64,000 nucleotides of DNA, taken from assembly GCA_033442325.1 (NCBI GenBank), contig JAWQFM010000006.1:685523-749522 (forward strand), given 5' to 3'. This DNA is from Salpingoeca rosetta (taxonomy: Eukaryota; Protista; Choanoflagellata). The position numbers and the translations under genes are program-made. Below the pieces are notes generated by a model, which saw nothing but the letters and a program-made list of their open reading frames with translations, did not search any database and had not been told where the DNA came from. Of this stretch, positions 39,144 to 48,748 are shown in pieces (within the stretch, counting starts at the first letter, position 1; each line of letters opens with the position of its first letter).

Positions 39144-39959
39144 ATGGTGCGCCGCGGCAACAGTGTCACGGACACGACAGAGGCCTTTGAGATGCAGCGT
39201 GAGTTGTGTTGTAGTGTTGTGTTGTGTGCTGTATTGTGTTGTGTTGTGTGTGCAGTGTAGTGTTGTGTGGTGTGTAGTGTTGTGTTGTGTATTCTCTCGA
39301 ACCATGATAAACCAATGTGCTGGCCACCACAACTTGCGTGCTCACGCACACACACATAACCACACACACAACCACACACACATAACCACACACGCACATA
39401 ACCACACACGCACACACGTCTGCTTCCCCTTTATTGCACAGACAACCCTGACCCTGTTCGTCAGCCGAGCATGCGGTCCCGCTCGGGGTCGAGCAACCTC
39501 CGCCGTCGATCGATGACGGAGCGCAAGGCATCCTCCAACGCCCAGTCGCGCCAGTTCGAGCGCCGCAGAGGTATGGTGGTGCCGCTGGCCGTGTCGGTGG
39601 TGCTGATGGTGGTGCTGGTGGTGGTCTGTGGTCACGCGTCTTTTGGATGTGATGCACACGCTCGCTGTGGGTTCTTCGCTTTTGCTTTGCACCCTTTGCA
39701 TTTCACACACGCATGCACACATCAACACGCTCACTGACAACCAACACACACACACACCAACCCACCTCTCACACCGACTGCAGCGGACCAGGTTCGCATC
39801 TGGAGTGAGAACCGGCCGTTCTTTGCGGCCAAGGCGGGCCTACTCAAGGTCCTGCAGAAGTTTGAGGAGTCCAGCTTCGCCTCCCATGAGGAGCGGGTAC
39901 GTGCAGTTGCACGTGCGTGCGTGTGTGCGTGTGTTTGTATCTGTGTGTTTGTTTGTGTC

Positions 39960-39992
<33 letters not shown>

Positions 39993-41005
39993 TGTCTGTC
40001 TGTCTGTCTGTCTGTGCCGGTATCTCTCTCCCTCTCTCTATGTGTGTGCCTGCATACGATTGAGTGTGGTTGGGTTGGTTGCCACCGTGAACCTTATTCC
40101 GCTGACGTTTCCCTCGCTCACGACACGCCACACACGTCTTCCCCTCCCCTCTCATTGCCGTCCCCCGGGGCAGGTTGACTTCTACGTGAACAACCGCGAC
40201 CCCGTTGGCGCGACGGTGCTGCACGTGACCATCCTCTGCGAATCCCTCGATGTCGCCAAGTACCTCATCAAGACGTGAGTCGACCCCACCAACAGCGGTG
40301 TCGGGTGTCGCGCTGTGTTGGATGGCGCATGTGCATTACATGCCGCCTTTAGCCTTCCTTGTTCACCTGTTCCCATCTCACAAAACACGCACACACAATA
40401 TGCACGACACGTGACGCACAACACACGCAACACACGCACACAACACAACATACAATTCACATGGTGTCTGTGCAGCTACGGCGCCAAGCTTGTGCGCCAG
40501 CCCTACGAGTCCACCCCACCCTCCCCCTACGAAGGAGAGACCGCCCTGCACCTGGCCATCGTCAAGCGCCAATATGAACTGGCCAAGATGCTCGTGCAGT
40601 ACGGCGCCGACATCAACGCCCACACCACAGGTGCACCCACTGCCCCGCGCTGTGGTTGTGCCTGTTTGTGTCTGTTTGTGCTTGTGTATATGTGTTTGTG
40701 TGTTTGTGTCTGTGTGTCTGGTTGTGCTTGTCTGTGTGTCTGGTTGTGCTTGTCTGTCATGTACGTCATCATCGTGGCGATGGTCGGGCATTGCGCGTGC
40801 TGTTTCTTCACTTACGACTCGTGTTCGCCGCCCCATACGTGCACGCATTTTCCTTTGCCTTGCCTGCAGGCACGTTCTTTGACCAAGAGATCTCTGTGGA
40901 CAAGGGCCTGTACTTTGGCAGCACGCCGCTGCACTTTGCCGTCTGCTCCGGCGATCTACGCATGGCCGAGTACCTCCTCAACCACAACGCAGACGCCTCC
41001 CTCCC

Positions 41006-41091
<86 letters not shown>

Positions 41092-42023
41092 CGCGCGCGC
41101 GTGTGTGTGTGTGTCGTACAATGCCATTCACAATACCCCTGCATTCGGCGTCTCAACACTTCAAACCCCCCCCCAATCACGACAGGATTCGTACGGCAAC
41201 ACGGCGCTGCACTTGTGCGTGGTGTATGAGGACCAGGCCATGTACGACCTTGTTGCCAGCCGCGACCAGGCCTTCGAGGGCAAGCTGAGGGTGCGCTGAC
41301 GCTGATGTTGATGTTGATGTCATCGCCATGGTGCCATTTCAGAATTCCCCTCGCCTGAAGAAACCTGTGCGCACAACAAACACCGCGAATATGTTCTCAC
41401 CCCCTCCCACACCCTGCGTACTCTCACCCTTTGCTTCATCCCCCTCTCCTATTATGACTTGCGCCAGGTTGCGCGCAACAACGACGGGCTGACGCCACTG
41501 AAGCTGGCTGCCAGTCTTGCCAGCGCCACCATGTTCAAGCACATCCTCCACCGCAACCGCGAACTCAACTGGGCTTTCGGACCCATCAAAGGTGCCGTAG
41601 TGTGTCTGTCTGTCTGTCTGTCTGCATGTGTGTGTGCGCGTGCATGCGTGCGTGTCTGTGTCTGTGTGTGTCTGTGCATGTATGCGTGTTTGTGTGTGTG
41701 TGTCTGCGCATGTATGCGTGTTTGTGTGTGTGTGTGTGTGTGCGTACGTGCGTGCGAGTTTGTGTGTGTGTGTGTGCGTACGTGCGTGCGAGTTTGTGTG
41801 TGTGTGTGTGTGTGCATCTCAGCGCTCTCTCAAGTGCACTTTGTTCCAACTCAACTTCATATCCCTCTCCCACCTCCGTTTGTTGGATGCGCAGAGTACC
41901 TGTACCCGCTGAAGGAGCTCGACAGTGTGGAGAAGGAAGGTGTTCTCGACATTCTCGTGCAGCATGGGTCTCTCGAGCACGCAACCCTTCTCAAGCTCCC
42001 GCCGCTCCAGTAAGCACCTCGTG

Positions 42024-42110
<87 letters not shown>

Positions 42111-43056
42111 CATTTCGTGACAAGCCGTGGACAACTCAAGGCAGCATGAAACATCTGCAAGCCCTCTACCCCTCGTATCTCACCCTTCAATCCATCAATC
42201 CCTCATCCAATACCCTGCGGTGTTGTTGTGTCCAGCGACATGCTGGCGGAGAAATGGTCCCGGTTTGCCAAGTTTGCCTTTGGCTGTTTCATCATGATCT
42301 ACATGGTCGTCATCGCCTGCCTCATTGCCGGTTCGTTCCACCGCCTGAAAGCACGCGCCCGCTGGCACTGCCCTCCTGTAATGAACGCCCTCTGCTGCCT
42401 TTGTGCGCTGCCAAGGCCGCCTTGTTCACGTCCCATCTCACCACCATCACCACCATCACCACCACAGCGCTGTACCTGACCCAGGAGCCCAACTCGTACT
42501 CGTCCACGCAGGATCTCGCCCGCCTCCTCCTCGAAATCATCGTCGTCTTCTGGGTCACCGTCGACACCGTCGCCTTCGAAATCCCAGGTGCATTTGCTTT
42601 GTGTGTGTCTGTGTGTCTGTGTGCCTGTGTGCCTGTGTCTGTGTCTGTGTGTCTGTGTCTGTGCCTGTGTCTGTGTGTGTCCCTGTCTGTCCCCTCCCCC
42701 AACGCACACACACACACACCATCCATCAACCTGCACTCTGCTGTCCCACATCCTTGTGCTGATCACCACGCCCTCCTCACCCCTCTCCCCTTTGTCTTTT
42801 CCTTTGTTGTGCACAGAGCTTGTGCGCTACGTGCGTCACGGCATACGCCCGAGCCAGCTGTATGCCGGGTCGTTTGTGTTTGTGATGAGCAACTGGCTGT
42901 TCCGCGCCATGCTGGTCATCTGCATTGTTCTCCGCGTCAGCGATGCCCAAGCGAACGTCCAGCGAACCTTCCTCAGCTTCCTCGCAGGTGCAGTCCCGTG
43001 TGTGTGCGTGTGCGTGTGTGTGTGTGTGCGTGCGTGTGTGTGTGTGTGCGTGTGTG

Positions 43057-43103
<47 letters not shown>

Positions 43104-45523
43104 ATCCGTCTCCCATGTTGCCACCCTGCCGCCCTGACGACATCGTTGCTGCACATGCGCCTTGCCCTCACCACCACCGCCGCCGCCACCACCACCATCA
43201 CATCGACCTGTCCACGGCCAGTGCTTGGCATGCTGTATCTGCTGCATTTCGCCCGTGGTGTGCGCGCATTCTCCAAGTTCATTCTCATGACCGAACGCAT
43301 GGTCATCGACATGCGGTTCTGGTGCGTACACGCAAGTGGTGATGACTGTCTATTTGTGACATCCATGTGTGTGCTGTCTGTCTGTGTGTGTGTGTGTGTG
43401 CGATGCTCCTCTGTGCTTGATGCACTCGCATCTCACATTCACTCCAACACCATGATCATCACCACCACGTCAGGACGATTGTGTTTGCGGTGGAGCTCGT
43501 TGGCTTCGCCCTCGGCTTCCAGCTCCTCTTCAACAACCACGACCCGCACACTGGTCGGCACGCATGTCGCTCTGTACTGTTCTGTGCGCTCGCGTTGCTG
43601 TTCTGTGTTGTTCTGTGCTCTCGCTTTGGTGTGTGTACTCGCGTCGTTGATGCTCTCACACACCCCCCCCCAACCACTTCCACCACCACACCTGACTCAA
43701 CCCCCACCTCTCCCTTTACATGTGTGCTGCTCGCACCAGGCCCGATTGACCTCGAGACGATGTGGATTGGCATGTTCACCCTTGTCAAGTGGACCATGGG
43801 CGAGGTGCGACCATTGTCGTCATGTTGCTGCTCTCACTCCTGCGACTGCTGTCGCGTCTCTTGCTGCTACATATTTCTCTTCCTTGTACTTCTTTCGTTA
43901 TATGCGTGATACCGTTTCCGCTCACACCCACCTTGCTGCTTTTCCACAAGACAATTTCACAACGCGCCTGCGTGTGATGTATTCATTGCTCCACACCTCA
44001 CTTTGTACACACACATTCGCATGCACGCACACATAACACCCTCACACACCCTCACACCCTTACCCACGCTGCTTGTCCTGCCTTGCTCGCGGCGCCAGTT
44101 CAACTTCACCTCCAATGAGGTTGAGGTCTCTATTTCGCAGCCCGCATCCTACATCCTCTTCATCGGATTCGTCATCCTCTCCGTATGTTTGCACCCACGA
44201 AAATGCACCCGTCTCTGTGTGTGTGTATGTGTCTGTCTGTGTGTGCGTGTGTGTGTTGGTTTGTTTGTGTGTGTGTGTGTGTCTGTGTCTGCGTCTGTGT
44301 GTTGGTGTGATCGTGTTCCCATCTGTGTGCATGTGTGTGCACTCGAGTACCATATCTGCTGCTTGTCTTCAGTCCCTCACCCCAGCTCTTCACACGACCC
44401 CGGCAACTGCTGCGTGCATTTCCCCCCTCAACCGCAACAGTCCACTGTCCTGTTCAACATCCTCATTGCTCTCATGACATCGACCTTCCAAACCTACGAC
44501 GCGGAAGCAACCACCCTTTCCACCATGCAGGTGCTGTGATTCGTCTCTGCCTCCATGTTTGCTTGTCTGTGTCTGTGTGCGTACGTGTGTGTCTCTGTGT
44601 GTGTCTGTGTATGTGTCTGTGTGTGTGTCTGTACATGTCAGTTCCGCGTCTCCGCGCTCAAAAACAAACCAACCCCCTTACCTGCTTCATCATCATCACC
44701 AACCACCACTGCAACAACAACAACAACAACAACAACAACTGCCACCACGCAGTGGGCGACGACGATTATCAGCATCGAGTACAAGCTGCGTCGCATTGGC
44801 GTCTACAGCAAGAAGTGGCGCACAGGAACACCTGGGGAGGACTGCGGTGGCCGTCCAAACGAATTCTACAAGGTGCGCGTGCACGTACTCGCGCGCGCGT
44901 GCGTGTGCGTGTGTCTGTAAGTGTGTGTCTATGTGTCTGTGTGTGTCTATGTGTCTGTGTGTGTGTCTAAGTCTGTGTGTGTGCGTGCAATCACAGCATG
45001 CCCTGCTTGCTTGCTCGTCCTCTTCGCCCACACTGCCGTGCTGGCCTCCATCGCCACTGCAGGTGACGCTGGTGTACGATGCGCCAGACAAGGCAAAGCG
45101 CGACAGCGAAGGCGGTGTCTCTCCCACAAAGCACGAAGCCAAGAAGCACGTTCCAGGGTACGCTCGTGGCATGCACATGTGTCTGTGCACGTGCATGTGT
45201 ACATGTGTGAATGCGTTACCTGTCAGCATGCATCCGCACATCTGCCCTGTATTCATTCGCCTTTTATCCCCACCAGATACCCGAGCACATACCACGACCG
45301 CAACGTGGACCGGTGGGACACCATCATGCGTCGGGTCAACAGCGACAGCCCGAGCGGAAACTACATTGAGGACTACTCTGAGATGGTGTCGATCTTTGAG
45401 CTGTATGAGGTGATGGAGCAGCGAAGCGTCAATCGTGAGACCGCCGCTTTTATTCTTCAGGACCTCGTCTTCAACAACGCCCTCAACCCAACAGAGGTGC
45501 GCAACAGCTGCCGGCAGTGTGTG

Positions 45524-45558
<35 letters not shown>

Positions 45559-46069
45559 GTTTTCGATGTTCAACCTTGACACCACTGTCCTTTGAACCCA
45601 CATGTGTGTGTGCGTGCATGTGTGTGTCTGTGTCTGTGCGTGCCAACAACAGGAGCTGAAGAACACGGTGCTGAAGGCGTCGCAGGTCGTGGCCGCGGAA
45701 CTCGACCCGGATGGCGTACGTGATGATGATGGTGGTGGCGGTGGTGGTGATGATACGCGACACCATTGGCTGCTCTGCTGCTGCTGCAATATTCACCCTT
45801 TTGTGTGTGTGCGTACACGATTGCCCATCACACCCTCAAGCACTCACACTCTCACACACACACACACATCCCTGTCGACGACAGGATGATGACATTCCGT
45901 ACGAGACGCTGGCGACATTCTGCCGGCTGAGCCGCATGTCGCTGATCCAGCGCAAGAACAGTTACGAGACGCGACGCCACGCCCTCATCGTGGTCGACTG
46001 CCAGAACGATTTCACCGCAAACGGCGCCGTCCCCGTCACGGTGCGCTGGCGGCGTTGTTGTTGTTTAAG

Positions 46070-46125
<56 letters not shown>

Positions 46126-46128
46126 CAG

Positions 46129-46216
<88 letters not shown>

Positions 46217-46218
46217 AG

Positions 46219-46261
<43 letters not shown>

Positions 46262-46763
46262 GTGCATTGTGTGCGTCTGCATGTTGTGTTGTCCCCCTGT
46301 TTCGCTGTTGCCTGCATGCTCCTTGATTGCTGTGTTCTCAACGTGTCCTTGGGCGCCTCTCTCCCTTCTTTCGCATCAGGGCTATCACAAGCGCAACGTC
46401 ATCAACCAAATCAACGCCCTTCGCGAGCAGTTCCCCTGGGACCTGGTGCGTTCACACACGCACGCACACACATACACACATATACATACATACACACACA
46501 TACATACATACACACACATACATACATACACACACATACACACAACACACAAATGCGCGCACGTACGCACAGCCATGCATCTTCAAACCGCTGTGCGCTT
46601 GGGTTGGTGCCGGTCTTGATGGTGTCCAATGCTGCTCCTGCTCACACGACCACACCATCAACTCCCTCGCATGTGTGCAGGTGGTCATGACCCAGGATTG
46701 GCATCCACGCAACCACATCTCCTTCAAGGGCTCAGAACTCGGCCGCGCAGGTGCAGAGCTCGT

Positions 46764-46848
<85 letters not shown>

Positions 46849-47915
46849 CTTCTGTTGCGTATCTGTCCGACAGATAACGTCCTCGACTCACCCCGTGTCC
46901 CCACACTAACCCCGCCCATCCCTCTCACCGCCACCATCACATCACCATCACCAGTGTACGACGACGATGAGGATGTTGTTGAGCGGCGGTGCCACAACGG
47001 CGATCTTGTGTATCTCCCCGATGACGTTGACGACATGATCTGGCCGCCCCACTGCATCCAGAACACAGACGGCGCGGACTTTGTGCCAGAGCTCATGGTC
47101 CGTCAGTGCAGGCGGTGTTGTTGCTTTTGTGTCTGCCTGTCTGTCTGTCTGTGTATCTGTGTGTCTTTGCCTGTGTTTGGGCGACACTGCGTGTCTCCCG
47201 TTCGCCAAAATGACTTTGAATCGCACCCTCTAACGTAGTTGTTCCGTTCATTCTTTTGTTTTTCGGATTTGATGCGGCGGCGCAGGTCAAGGACGACGAC
47301 ATCATCGTTCGCAAGGTATGCATGCAGACTGTTGCTGGCGTCAAGTATCTTTCTTCTTTGCCTTGTTGTGACCTCGTGTTTGCTCGTGACTGAGCACATT
47401 TTCTACGCTCACACACACACACGCACACGTGTGTCGTCTTCTCCGCAGGCGATGGACCCGGCTGTGGACAGCTACTCTGCATTCTGGGACAACGCGCGCA
47501 AGAGCCAGACGCGGTACGCGATGACAGTAGAGCGTTGTGTGTGTCTGTGTGTGTGTGTCTGTGTTTGTGTGTCTGTGTTTGTGTGTCTGTGTGTGTGTGT
47601 TCCTTTGTCTGTCCGTCTATCCATCTGGATGTGTGTACACACGTTCTTTCTCTCACACTCCCCTCCCTCACCCCACCACTACTGATCCCTCATCTCCCAT
47701 GATCGCTGCAGGCTGTTTGAGCACCTGTTCAACCACCAGATTGAGGATGTGTTCATCGTCGGCCTTGGCTTCGACTGCGCTGTCGGCCGCACCGCCCGCG
47801 ACGCCGCAACATACGGTCCGCTGCTCCTGTTCGCGCACGCATGGCCTTGGATTGGGAGGGGGATGAGCTGAACAACCAGGGGATGGAGTTGCGTGTGTGT
47901 AGGGGGGTGTGGGTT

Positions 47916-47966
<51 letters not shown>

Positions 47967-48748
47967 CGCAGAGGTTCACAGTGCGCGGCCAAGGCCATTG
48001 CCTACGCGCTCATTCTTTCCATCACTCACTCACGCGTTTGCTTGTTTCGCCATACGCTGCTGCGTGCTGTTAGGCTTCAACACGCACGTCATTGAGGACT
48101 GCACGTGCTGGTTTGATGACCGCTGGCGAAACGAAATGCATTTGGAGCTCTTTGATGCCCACGTGCAAGTCATCAAGACAACCGATATTATCGCGGTCAG
48201 TGTCACATACACGAGCACAAGATGCATGCGTTGGTTTTGGTTTGCCTGTCTGTGTGTGCACGTGTATGTGTGTGGTGGGGGGGCGCACGTGTGTGTGAGA
48301 ATGCAGCTCATATCGTTGCTGCTGGTTGTATGGTTGTTGTACTGACGCCTCCACTCACGCAACCATGATTATCCCTTCCTCCTCCTCCTCCTCCTCCTCC
48401 TCCTCCTCGTCGCCACCAATCACTATCAACAGCATCGCGAGCGCTCCTCCTTTGTTGTTCTCGACAGCAACACCATTTCCGAAATCTCCAGCCGCTCAAA
48501 GAAGGTGTGTGCGTGCGTGTGTGTGTCTGTGTGTGTCTGTGTGTGTGTGTGCCTGTGTGTGTCTGTGTGTGTCTTGCTACATGTTCTCACCACCACCGCC
48601 GCCACCACCACGACCACAACCACTACTCACAAACACACGCACGCACACACACGCACGCACACGCACGCACACGCACGCATGATAGGTTGTCCGCAAGCGC
48701 CCGACACAGAAGTTTGTTCGTCGCACTCGCATGATCAGCCACGCCTAA
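39144..48748 (+). CDS. TRPV-like cation channel (ankyrin repeats and 6 TM) fused to an EF-hand-like region and a C-terminal nicotinamidase/isochorismatase-fold domain; ~31 exons
   Basis: TRPV hallmarks: [21 protein letters not shown]|[62 protein letters not shown], pore KWTMGE, S6 [17 protein letters not shown]. Nicotinamidase motifs: [66 protein letters not shown]. Splice phases checked and consistent from S6 to the TAA at 48746-48748. Confidence 0.9.
46053..46260. repeat. intronic (GTT)n microsatellite with TTAA interruptions
   Basis: Seen directly. A similar interrupted tract (aacttaaac) lies at ~31427-31510. Confidence 0.9.

What the first reader, a model, noticed from the sequence alone, without database searches (positions are those of the whole stretch)
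47712..47815. Catalytic Cys of the fused nicotinamidase aligns to Ala while the metal site is intact: probable pseudo-enzyme ligand sensor
Seen: codons 47761-47784 read G-L-G-F-D-C-A-V. Known: nicotinamidases have G-[LI]-A-x-D-[YHF]-C-V, for example M. tuberculosis PncA VGIATDHCVRQTAEDA, and this Cys is the nucleophile. An ungapped alignment with [16 protein letters not shown] puts Ala (GCT, 47779-47781) at the nucleophile and a Cys one residue earlier. The triad Asp (VVD) and Lys (IVRK) are present, as are the metal ligands (DWH, H of NHISF, H of WPPHC). Inference: the domain may bind nicotinamide through the metal without hydrolysing it, like the catalytically dead NUDT9-H domain of vertebrate TRPM2. 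Alternatively the shifted Cys may rescue catalysis.
Basis: partly seen in the sequence, partly recalled or inferred. Interest (0 to 1): 0.88.

Follow-up and report, generated by a model that had tools for sequence, protein, structure and literature searches.

The report
Nucleophile-less nicotinamidase domain on choanoflagellate TRPV
The nicotinamidase-like domain at the end of the Salpingoeca rosetta TRPV channel lacks the enzyme's essential cysteine but keeps its metal and ligand pocket, and its relatives in other choanoflagellates have each lost different catalytic residues, so it is most likely a dead enzyme reused as a sensor.

Summary
**Observation: confirmed.** Window 47761-47784 reads G-L-G-F-D-C-A-V inside exon 47712-47815 of srTRPV (PTSG_00895, Salpingoeca rosetta).

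- **Nucleophile.** Among 121 closest nicotinamidase-family sequences, the column of Ala979 is Cys in 120. The exception is a fragment of a TRPV orthologue.
- **Other catalytic residues.** Asp817, Lys934 and the metal ligands Asp859, His861, His865 and His909 are intact.
- **Register.** AlphaFold models of this domain and of a canonical enzyme show the same strand-coil-helix register. Ala979 sits where the nucleophile should be, and Cys978 lies one residue earlier.
- **Orthologues.** Seven TRPV-fused domains form one clade, and none keeps the full catalytic set.
  - Four keep the metal site and pocket but have D-C-A-V, D-C-Q-V or D-V-A-V.
  - Choanoeca perplexa has G-V-G-V.
  - Two keep the canonical Cys but have lost Lys, Asp or metal ligands.
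- **Shifted Cys.** It is absent from Craspedida sp. UC1, whose site is otherwise intact.
- **Paralogue.** S. rosetta has a separate canonical nicotinamidase gene (GLAYDVCV).

**Reading.** The domain is probably a pseudo-enzyme that senses a ligand, most likely nicotinamide. Binding and gating were not tested.

**Prior work.** The fusion was published in 2026, without mention of catalytic residues or nicotinamide.

The parts
39144..48748 (+). srTRPV gene (PTSG_00895, 1075 aa): ankyrin repeats, six-helix channel, EF-hand-like linker, C-terminal nicotinamidase-fold domain
   Evidence: P0004 maps exon by exon at 91-100% identity. Precomputed Pfam: ankyrin, PF00520, PF00857. Named srTRPV in bioRxiv 10.64898/2026.06.15.732245.
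47712..47815 (+). Exon holding the strand, cis-peptide position and nucleophile helix. Motif G973-L-G-F-D-C978-A979-V980 at 47761-47784.
47776..47781 (+). TGC GCT = Cys978 (one residue before the nucleophile position) and Ala979 (at the nucleophile position)
   Evidence: The Ala979 column is Cys in 120 of 121 relatives. It is the fourth helix residue in both models.
45885..46040 (+). First exon of the amidase core. Catalytic Asp817 (GAC, 45996-45998) in [11 protein letters not shown]; Phe822 of the pocket.
46380..46445 (+). Amidase exon ([22 protein letters not shown])
46681..46750 (+). Amidase exon with metal ligands Asp859 (46696-46698), His861 (46702-46704) and His865 (46714-46716)
46955..47097 (+). 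Amidase exon with Trp906 and metal ligand His909 (47050-47052) in WPPHC, after a lineage-specific acidic insertion
47286..47315 (+). Ten-codon exon ending in catalytic Lys934 (47313-47315)
47449..47513 (+). Amidase exon with the DSYSAF pocket motif (Tyr943)
48074..48195 (+). Last exon of the amidase core ([17 protein letters not shown]...)
45277..45496 (+). Linker exon, first half of the degenerate EF-hand-like pair
   Evidence: hhalign to the N-terminal EF-hand pair of long-form nicotinamidases: probability 92.8%, E 3.9e-7.
45653..45715 (+). Linker exon ([21 protein letters not shown]), start of the second EF-hand-like loop. Boundaries inferred from the translation.

Best explanation
The C-terminal domain of srTRPV descends from a complete eukaryotic nicotinamidase, EF-hand pair plus amidase, that was fused once to a TRPV channel in craspedid choanoflagellates.

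In S. rosetta it keeps the nicotinamidase fold, the metal site (Asp859, His861, His865, His909), the aromatic pocket (Phe822, Trp906, Tyr943) and the Asp/Lys of the triad. It has Ala where the thioester-forming Cys must be, and Gly where the oxyanion-hole Ala normally is.

It most likely cannot hydrolyse nicotinamide. It probably acts as a cytosolic ligand-binding module, with nicotinamide or a close pyridine analogue held by the metal, whose occupancy is passed to the channel.

Shown: loss of the nucleophile, retention of the pocket, mosaic decay in orthologues, a separate canonical enzyme in the genome.

Inferred: ligand identity, binding, coupling to gating.
For: - Motif and register.
- Family: 256 bits against a profile of canonical nicotinamidases. 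Closest relatives are named nicotinamidases at 35-41% identity, E about 1e-50.
- Fold: AlphaFold model pLDDT 88.8. Best PDB matches are Drosophila Naam, A. baumannii PncA, Pnc1, Leishmania PNC1 and M. tuberculosis PncA.
- Helix register: in srTRPV the strand ends at Leu974, Gly975 is coil, and the helix starts at Phe976. In the canonical control the strand ends at Leu152, Ala153 is coil, the helix starts at Leu154 and Cys157 is its fourth residue, as Ala979 is.
- Orthologue table:
  - S. infusionum 1: D-C-Q-V.
  - Logan fragment: D-C-A-V.
  - Craspedida sp. UC1: D-V-A-V. These three and S. rosetta keep the metal ligands, Lys and, where the sequence covers it, Asp.
  - C. perplexa: G-V-G-V.
  - S. 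infusionum 2: E-T-C-V, but Asp859Arg, His861Leu, Lys934Arg.
  - S. macrocollata: D-T-C-V, but Asp817Gly, His865Ser, His909Tyr.
- Tree: one clade, 100/99.
- Canonical paralogue on contig C3 with GLAYDVCV and all other motifs.
- Defining features of nicotinamidases (triad, cis-peptide, DxH...PxH, 'CV'): PMC3581539.
- Nicotinamide is an agonist of animal TRPV channels: PMC5064019, PMC12808645.
Against: - No binding or activity data exist.
- Cys978 is conserved in three of the five Cys979-less sequences. It lies one residue from the nucleophile position, so a local rearrangement could bring it into the site.
- The AlphaFold register is guided by the alignment, so it is not independent evidence.
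- Cys-independent chemistry exists elsewhere in the isochorismatase superfamily.
- In animals nicotinamide binds TRPV at the ankyrin-repeat interface, not at an added domain. The parallel is therefore only functional.
- S. rosetta has Ala935 where 121 of 121 relatives have Gly. The effect is unknown.
Confidence: 0.55

Rival explanations
1. The domain is still a working nicotinamidase. Cys978, shifted by one residue, serves as the nucleophile after a local rearrangement of the first helical turn, which makes srTRPV a true channel-enzyme.
For: - Cys978 is present in S. rosetta, S. infusionum 1 and the Logan fragment, all with intact Asp, Lys and metal site.
- Cys is otherwise almost never seen in that column (1 of 121, and that one is a TRPV fragment).
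- Gly975 could give the loop extra freedom.
Against: - UC1 has Val978 and Ala979 with an otherwise intact site, and is the well-supported sister (100/99) of the D-C-A-V fragment.
- The three Cys978 rows as one clade are marginally rejected (AU p 0.038).
- The column is normally V/Y/F/I, so Cys may be only a conservative core replacement.
- Models show an unchanged register.
- Other orthologues lost Lys, Asp or metal ligands, which indicates catalysis is not under selection in the clade.
Confidence: 0.15
2. The domain no longer binds nicotinamide. It serves as a structural or assembly module, a metal or redox sensor, or a binding site for another protein or for Ca2+ through the EF-hand-like linker.
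For: - Several orthologues have lost metal ligands and pocket residues yet keep the domain (S. infusionum 2, S. macrocollata).
- S. kvevrii keeps only a vestige.
- The fold and the helix after the motif ([12 protein letters not shown]) are more uniformly conserved than the catalytic residues.
Against: In S. rosetta, S. infusionum 1, UC1 and the Logan fragment every metal ligand and pocket aromatic is kept at only 47-49% overall identity. That pattern fits selection on the pocket itself.
Confidence: 0.2
3. The domain has a new catalytic activity that needs no cysteine, for example metal-activated water acting on another pyridine or amide substrate.
For: Cys-independent enzymes exist in the isochorismatase superfamily (established knowledge: isochorismatases such as EntB and PhzD). 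Asp, Lys and the metal are kept in four sequences.
Against: No precedent within the nicotinamidase branch, where the Cys column is 120 of 121. Mosaic loss of Asp, Lys and metal in other orthologues.
Confidence: 0.05
4. The TGC-GCT reading is an assembly or sequencing error, and the real gene has a canonical D-x-C-V.
Against: - No single-base change turns GAC TGC GCT GTC into D-x-C-V.
- Independent orthologues from a transcriptome, a Logan contig and a metagenome show the same arrangement.
- DNA runs from several studies hold 60-85% of the sampled words of the region.
Confidence: 0.02

Closest known systems
Canonical eukaryotic nicotinamidases (Drosophila Naam, PDB 9u8m; yeast Pnc1; the S. rosetta paralogue on contig C3)
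   Same: Same fold, 35-41% identity, same Asp, Lys, metal ligands and aromatic pocket. The linker is homologous to the N-terminal EF-hand pair of the long animal-type form.
   Different: Ala at the nucleophile position, Gly at the cis-peptide/oxyanion Ala, Ala935 for the invariant Gly. Fused to a channel. A long stem branch and long branches within the clade.
NUDT9-H domain of vertebrate TRPM2
   Same: An enzyme-derived domain at the C-terminus of a TRP channel that, in vertebrates, has lost catalysis (eLife 2019, PMC6461439, abstract).
   Different: Different fold (Nudix versus isochorismatase-like), different channel family and different ligand (ADP-ribose). Ligand gating is shown for TRPM2 and not for srTRPV.
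Nicotinamide-gated invertebrate TRPV channels (OSM-9/OCR-4, Nan-Iav)
   Same: TRPV family. Nicotinamide is an agonist, and nicotinamidase PNC-1 sets its level (PMC5064019).
   Different: In Nan-Iav nicotinamide binds a cavity between ankyrin-repeat domains (PMC12808645). The nicotinamidase is a separate protein, and there is no C-terminal amidase domain.
Choanoflagellate TRPM2 chanzyme (srTRPM2)
   Same: Same organism. A TRP channel with a C-terminal domain taken from NAD-metabolite enzymology (bioRxiv 10.1101/2023.03.16.533055).
   Different: The srTRPM2 Nudix domain is catalytically active according to that work. The srTRPV amidase domain lacks its nucleophile.

Membership tests
Nicotinamidase (EC 3.5.1.19, isochorismatase-like cysteine hydrolase, PF00857) | Isochorismatase-like fold and sequence homology to nicotinamidases | tested here: met
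   256 bits against a profile of 119 nicotinamidases. PF00857 precomputed. Foldseek top hits are all nicotinamidases, E 1e-22 to 1e-15.
Nicotinamidase (EC 3.5.1.19, isochorismatase-like cysteine hydrolase, PF00857) | Catalytic Cys in the 'CV' fingerprint, six residues after the conserved Gly (PMC3581539) | tested here: not met
   Ala979 occupies the column that is Cys in 120 of 121 relatives. Cys978 is at Gly+5. Same helix register in both models.
Nicotinamidase (EC 3.5.1.19, isochorismatase-like cysteine hydrolase, PF00857) | Catalytic Asp and Lys of the triad | tested here: met
   Asp817 and Lys934 lie in columns that are D in 120 of 121 and K in 121 of 121.
Nicotinamidase (EC 3.5.1.19, isochorismatase-like cysteine hydrolase, PF00857) | Metal-binding motif DxH ... 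H ... PxH | tested here: met
   Asp859, His861, His865 and His909 are present. Metal occupancy itself is not testable here.
Nicotinamidase (EC 3.5.1.19, isochorismatase-like cysteine hydrolase, PF00857) | Cis-peptide residue (usually Ala, Cys in Firmicutes) after the conserved Gly, forming the oxyanion hole | tested here: inconclusive
   Gly975 where 119 of 121 have Ala. One canonical Cys-bearing sequence (P0032) also has Gly. Peptide geometry cannot be read from the tools.
Nicotinamidase (EC 3.5.1.19, isochorismatase-like cysteine hydrolase, PF00857) | Hydrolysis of nicotinamide to nicotinate and ammonia | not testable with these tools
   Needs an enzyme assay.
TRPV channel | N-terminal ankyrin repeats, six-helix ion-transport domain, closest animal relatives in TRPV | tested here: met
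   Precomputed Pfam: ankyrin families and PF00520. The best non-choanoflagellate hits of the full-length profile include named TRPV5/6-like proteins. Placed in TRPV by the 2026 preprint.
Dead-enzyme ligand sensor on a TRP channel (the vertebrate TRPM2 NUDT9-H kind) | Enzyme-derived C-terminal domain with a catalytic residue lost but the binding site kept | tested here: met
Dead-enzyme ligand sensor on a TRP channel (the vertebrate TRPM2 NUDT9-H kind) | Ligand binding to the domain opens or modulates the channel | not testable with these tools
   Needs electrophysiology and binding assays.

The most novel reading that the evidence does not exclude
srTRPV is gated or tuned by cytosolic nicotinamide through a dead nicotinamidase that serves as its sensor. 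The link between nicotinamide and TRPV channels would then predate animals. With their TRPM2-type ADP-ribose sensors, choanoflagellates would read both products of NAD+ cleavage through enzyme-derived channel domains. Animals would later have dropped the domain and moved nicotinamide recognition to the ankyrin repeats.
Probability: 0.3. Interest if true: 0.85.

Novelty: new variant of a known kind. Interest (0 to 1): 0.62.

Why it matters
Enzyme-derived sensor domains on ion channels are rare, and TRPM2 is the textbook case. This looks like a second, independent example on a TRPV channel.

Nicotinamide is the ligand the domain's ancestry points to, and it is already a known agonist of nematode and insect TRPV channels. 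The 2026 papers that reported the fusion did not discuss catalytic residues or nicotinamide.

The residue-level picture gives a concrete hypothesis that can be tested in a tractable organism, with cheap assays on an isolated 240-residue domain:
- the nucleophile is missing;
- the pocket is kept;
- catalytic residues decay in a mosaic pattern across species;
- a separate working-type paralogue exists in the same genome.

Tried and rejected
- **Read laying.** There is therefore no read-level check and no splice evidence from RNA. The only later use of the whole window was as the subject of a local tblastn mapping inside a script.
- **Pfam on single exons.** Only a 12.7-bit hit for exon 47713-47814. 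Exons are too short on their own.
- **PF00857 search of the own genome.** It found only an ISOC2-like gene (L001), not the window gene and not the canonical paralogue. A protein query was needed.
- **Representative search with the 73-residue linker exon.** It did not return the S. rosetta protein itself, but it gave the S. infusionum orthologue, which opened the way to the rest.
- **AU test on the 68-row tree.** It did not finish, and was repeated on 22 rows with LG+G4.
- **Single-sequence HMM score of the S. rosetta linker against the EF-hand region of long-form nicotinamidases.** 6.1 bits, no better than shuffles. Only the profile-profile comparison is significant.
- **Model geometry.** The structure tools give no coordinates, so the distance of the Cys978 sulphur from the metal site could not be measured.

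Full report
**What is there**

The window is a eukaryotic sequence with short exons and introns rich in GT/CA repeats. It lies on contig C6 of a 55.4-Mb genome.

The finding's exon, 47712-47815, has AG and GT at its borders. Bases 47761-47784 read GGC CTT GGC TTC GAC TGC GCT GTC, which is G-L-G-F-D-C-A-V.

The exon belongs to a gene of about 25 exons spanning 39144-48748 on the + strand. That gene matches database protein P0004, 'hypothetical protein PTSG_00895 [Salpingoeca rosetta]', 1075 aa, exon by exon. In P0004 the motif is Gly973-Val980.

The protein has these parts in order:
- ankyrin repeats;
- an ion-transport domain;
- a linker;
- a C-terminal PF00857 domain (precomputed Pfam).

**What is already published**

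A 2026 preprint (10.64898/2026.06.15.732245) and its PNAS version (PMC13663828) name this protein srTRPV. They report the following:
- The domain is present in 14 of 18 craspedid TRPVs and absent from acanthoecid proteins.
- Tagged srTRPV localises to the base of the collar.

Neither text contains the words 'nicotinamid...' or 'catalytic'. The fusion is therefore known. The state of the active site and the link to nicotinamide are not discussed there.

**Is the domain a nicotinamidase?**

- A profile search with the three first-found TRPV domains returned 4306 proteins at E <= 1e-10. The top hits are proteins named nicotinamidase from animals and protists, at 35-41% identity and E about 1e-50.
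- An HMM built from 119 of them scores P0004 at 256 bits.
- An AlphaFold model of residues 800-1040 has mean pLDDT 88.8.
- Its best PDB matches are Drosophila nicotinamidase 9u8m, A. baumannii PncA, P. horikoshii PncA, yeast Pnc1, Leishmania PNC1 and M. tuberculosis PncA.

**The active site, column by column**

PMC3581539 lists the defining features of nicotinamidases:
- a Cys-Asp-Lys triad;
- a cis-peptide residue, usually Ala, after a conserved Gly, forming the oxyanion hole together with the Cys backbone;
- a DxH ... PxH metal motif;
- a 'CV' fingerprint.

The 121 relatives compare with srTRPV as follows:

| srTRPV residue | Role | Column in 121 relatives |
|---|---|---|
| Asp817 | triad | D in 120 |
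| Asp859 | metal | D in 120 |
| His861 | metal | H in 121 |
| His865 | metal | H in 121 |
| His909 | metal | H in 121 |
| Lys934 | triad | K in 121 |
| Tyr943 | pocket | Y in 121 |
| Ala979 | nucleophile position | C in 120 |
| Gly975 | cis-peptide position | A in 119 |
| Cys978 | one before the nucleophile | V 64, Y 31, F 15, I 8, C 1 |

srTRPV therefore matches its relatives at every position in the first seven rows and departs at the last three. The single relative without Cys at the nucleophile column, which is also the single one with Cys one residue earlier, is P0007, a fragment of a TRPV orthologue.

phmmer against the PDB and hmmalign give the same ungapped register. Asp977 and Val980 flank the pair on both sides, so a gapped alignment that would put Cys978 on the nucleophile is not favoured.

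A canonical control (P0006 residues 1-200) was modelled the same way:

| | Strand ends | Coil | Helix starts | Fourth helix residue |
|---|---|---|---|---|
| Canonical control | Leu152 | Ala153 | Leu154 | Cys157 |
| srTRPV | Leu974 | Gly975 | Phe976 | Ala979 |

The register is the same in both models. It is guided by the alignment, so it is supporting evidence and not independent.

**Orthologues**

One representative search and three homology searches gave six more TRPV-fused domains, identified.

| Sequence | Motif | State of the rest of the site |
|---|---|---|
| S. rosetta | D-C-A-V | intact |
| S. infusionum paralogue 1 (P0001) | D-C-Q-V | intact |
| Logan fragment (P0007) | D-C-A-V | metal Asp is Glu; otherwise intact where covered |
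| Craspedida sp. UC1 (P0005/P0245) | D-V-A-V | metal Asp is Glu; Asp817, three His and Lys kept |
| Choanoeca perplexa (P0127) | G-V-G-V | metal site kept (Asp859 is Glu); pocket partly changed |
| S. infusionum paralogue 2 (P0128) | E-T-C-V | Asp859Arg, His861Leu, Lys934Arg |
| S. macrocollata (P0129) | D-T-C-V | Asp817Gly, His865Ser, His909Tyr, Pro at the cis-peptide position |

S. kvevrii (P0246) keeps only a vestige of the domain (weak).

No member has the full canonical set. The seven domains form one clade (100/99), which fits a single fusion.

- A single loss of the canonical Cys is not rejected (AU p 0.4).
- The three sequences with the shifted Cys as one clade are marginally rejected (p 0.038). 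The reason is that UC1 (D-V-A-V) is the strongly supported sister of the D-C-A-V fragment.
- The deeper topology is unresolved, and the two Cys-bearing sequences sit on long branches.

**Meaning**

Different lineages lost different catalytic residues. This mosaic pattern is what is expected when the fold is under selection but catalysis is not.

Within the S. rosetta group, all metal ligands and pocket aromatics are retained at only 47-49% overall identity. That points to continued selection on the pocket.

The shifted Cys is dispensable in UC1, and it replaces a normally hydrophobic residue. It is more probably a conservative core substitution than a rescued nucleophile, although this is not excluded.

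S. rosetta also carries a separate multi-exon gene on contig C3 with every canonical motif, including GLAYDVCV. NAD salvage therefore does not depend on the channel's domain.

**Mechanism proposed**

This part is inferred. The domain is cytosolic, as C-termini of TRPV channels are. It probably binds nicotinamide or a close analogue through the metal and the aromatic pocket without turning it over. Binding would then act on the channel through the EF-hand-like linker.

Nicotinamide is an established agonist of C. elegans OSM-9/OCR-4 and insect Nan-Iav, where it binds between ankyrin-repeat domains. The choanoflagellate arrangement would be a different structural solution to the same coupling. 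It would also parallel the dead NUDT9-H domain of vertebrate TRPM2.

**Origin of the linker**

A profile-profile comparison aligns the linker of TRPV orthologues with the N-terminal EF-hand pair of long-form nicotinamidases. Probability is 92.8%, E is 3.9e-7, over 82 columns, with both loops in register. The first loop has lost its acidic ligands.

A whole EF-hand-plus-amidase gene therefore seems to have been fused. For S. rosetta alone the signal is not above shuffles.

**Limits**

I worked beside those places afterwards.
- No model coordinates were available.
- There are no binding or activity data.
- Only seven of the reported fourteen domain-bearing orthologues were reachable.

**Verdict**

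- The pseudo-enzyme reading is the best supported, at about 0.55.
- The shifted-nucleophile alternative is weakened, at about 0.15.
- It is a new variant of a known kind: a dead enzyme domain acting as a sensor on a TRP channel, sitting on a fusion that has already been published.

Noticed in passing
G000:C3:2092643-2095738 (loci L002, L004), minus strand: A separate multi-exon canonical nicotinamidase gene in the same genome. Its exons carry ALIVVDVQHDF, DWHPRDHISF, MWPAHCVQG, IDSYSAFFDN and CCGLAYDVCVGFTALD.
   Followed up: partly
window 45277-45496, 45653-45715 and the start of 45885-46040: The linker between channel and amidase is homologous to the N-terminal EF-hand pair of long-form (animal-type) nicotinamidases (hhalign probability 92.8%, E 3.9e-7). 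The first loop is degenerate. This bears on the scan's note s1-434562.
   Followed up: partly
L001 = G000:C2:2121072-2124200: An ISOC2-like isochorismatase-domain gene (..[29 protein letters not shown]..). It was the only hit of the PF00857 search of the genome, and it is not a nicotinamidase.
   Followed up: no
P0001 and P0128 (Salpingoeca infusionum): Two TRPV paralogues with the fused domain occur in one species, with opposite decay. One lacks the Cys but keeps the metal site and Lys. The other keeps the Cys but lacks two metal ligands and Lys.
   Followed up: partly
P0246 (Salpingoeca kvevrii TRPV, about residues 917-959): Only a vestige of the amidase domain remains (..VSGTSVETNVKTALDAARLGF.., 3.9 bits). 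It may be one of the TRPVs scored as lacking the domain.
   Followed up: no
P0006 (EukProt, 1138 aa): A canonical nicotinamidase (GLALDYCV) joined N-terminally to a PIN/RNB exoribonuclease-like protein. This is either a real fusion or a merged gene model.
   Followed up: no
window 46041-46379: The intron after the first amidase exon holds about 200 bases of near-perfect (GTT)n. Most other introns of the gene hold long (GT)n or (CA)n tracts.
   Followed up: no
window 48196-48748: The 3' end of the annotated model ([24 protein letters not shown]...RMISHA) uses splice choices different from the ones I first read from the sequence. The C-terminal tail after the amidase core is not confirmed by any transcript evidence here.
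   Followed up: no
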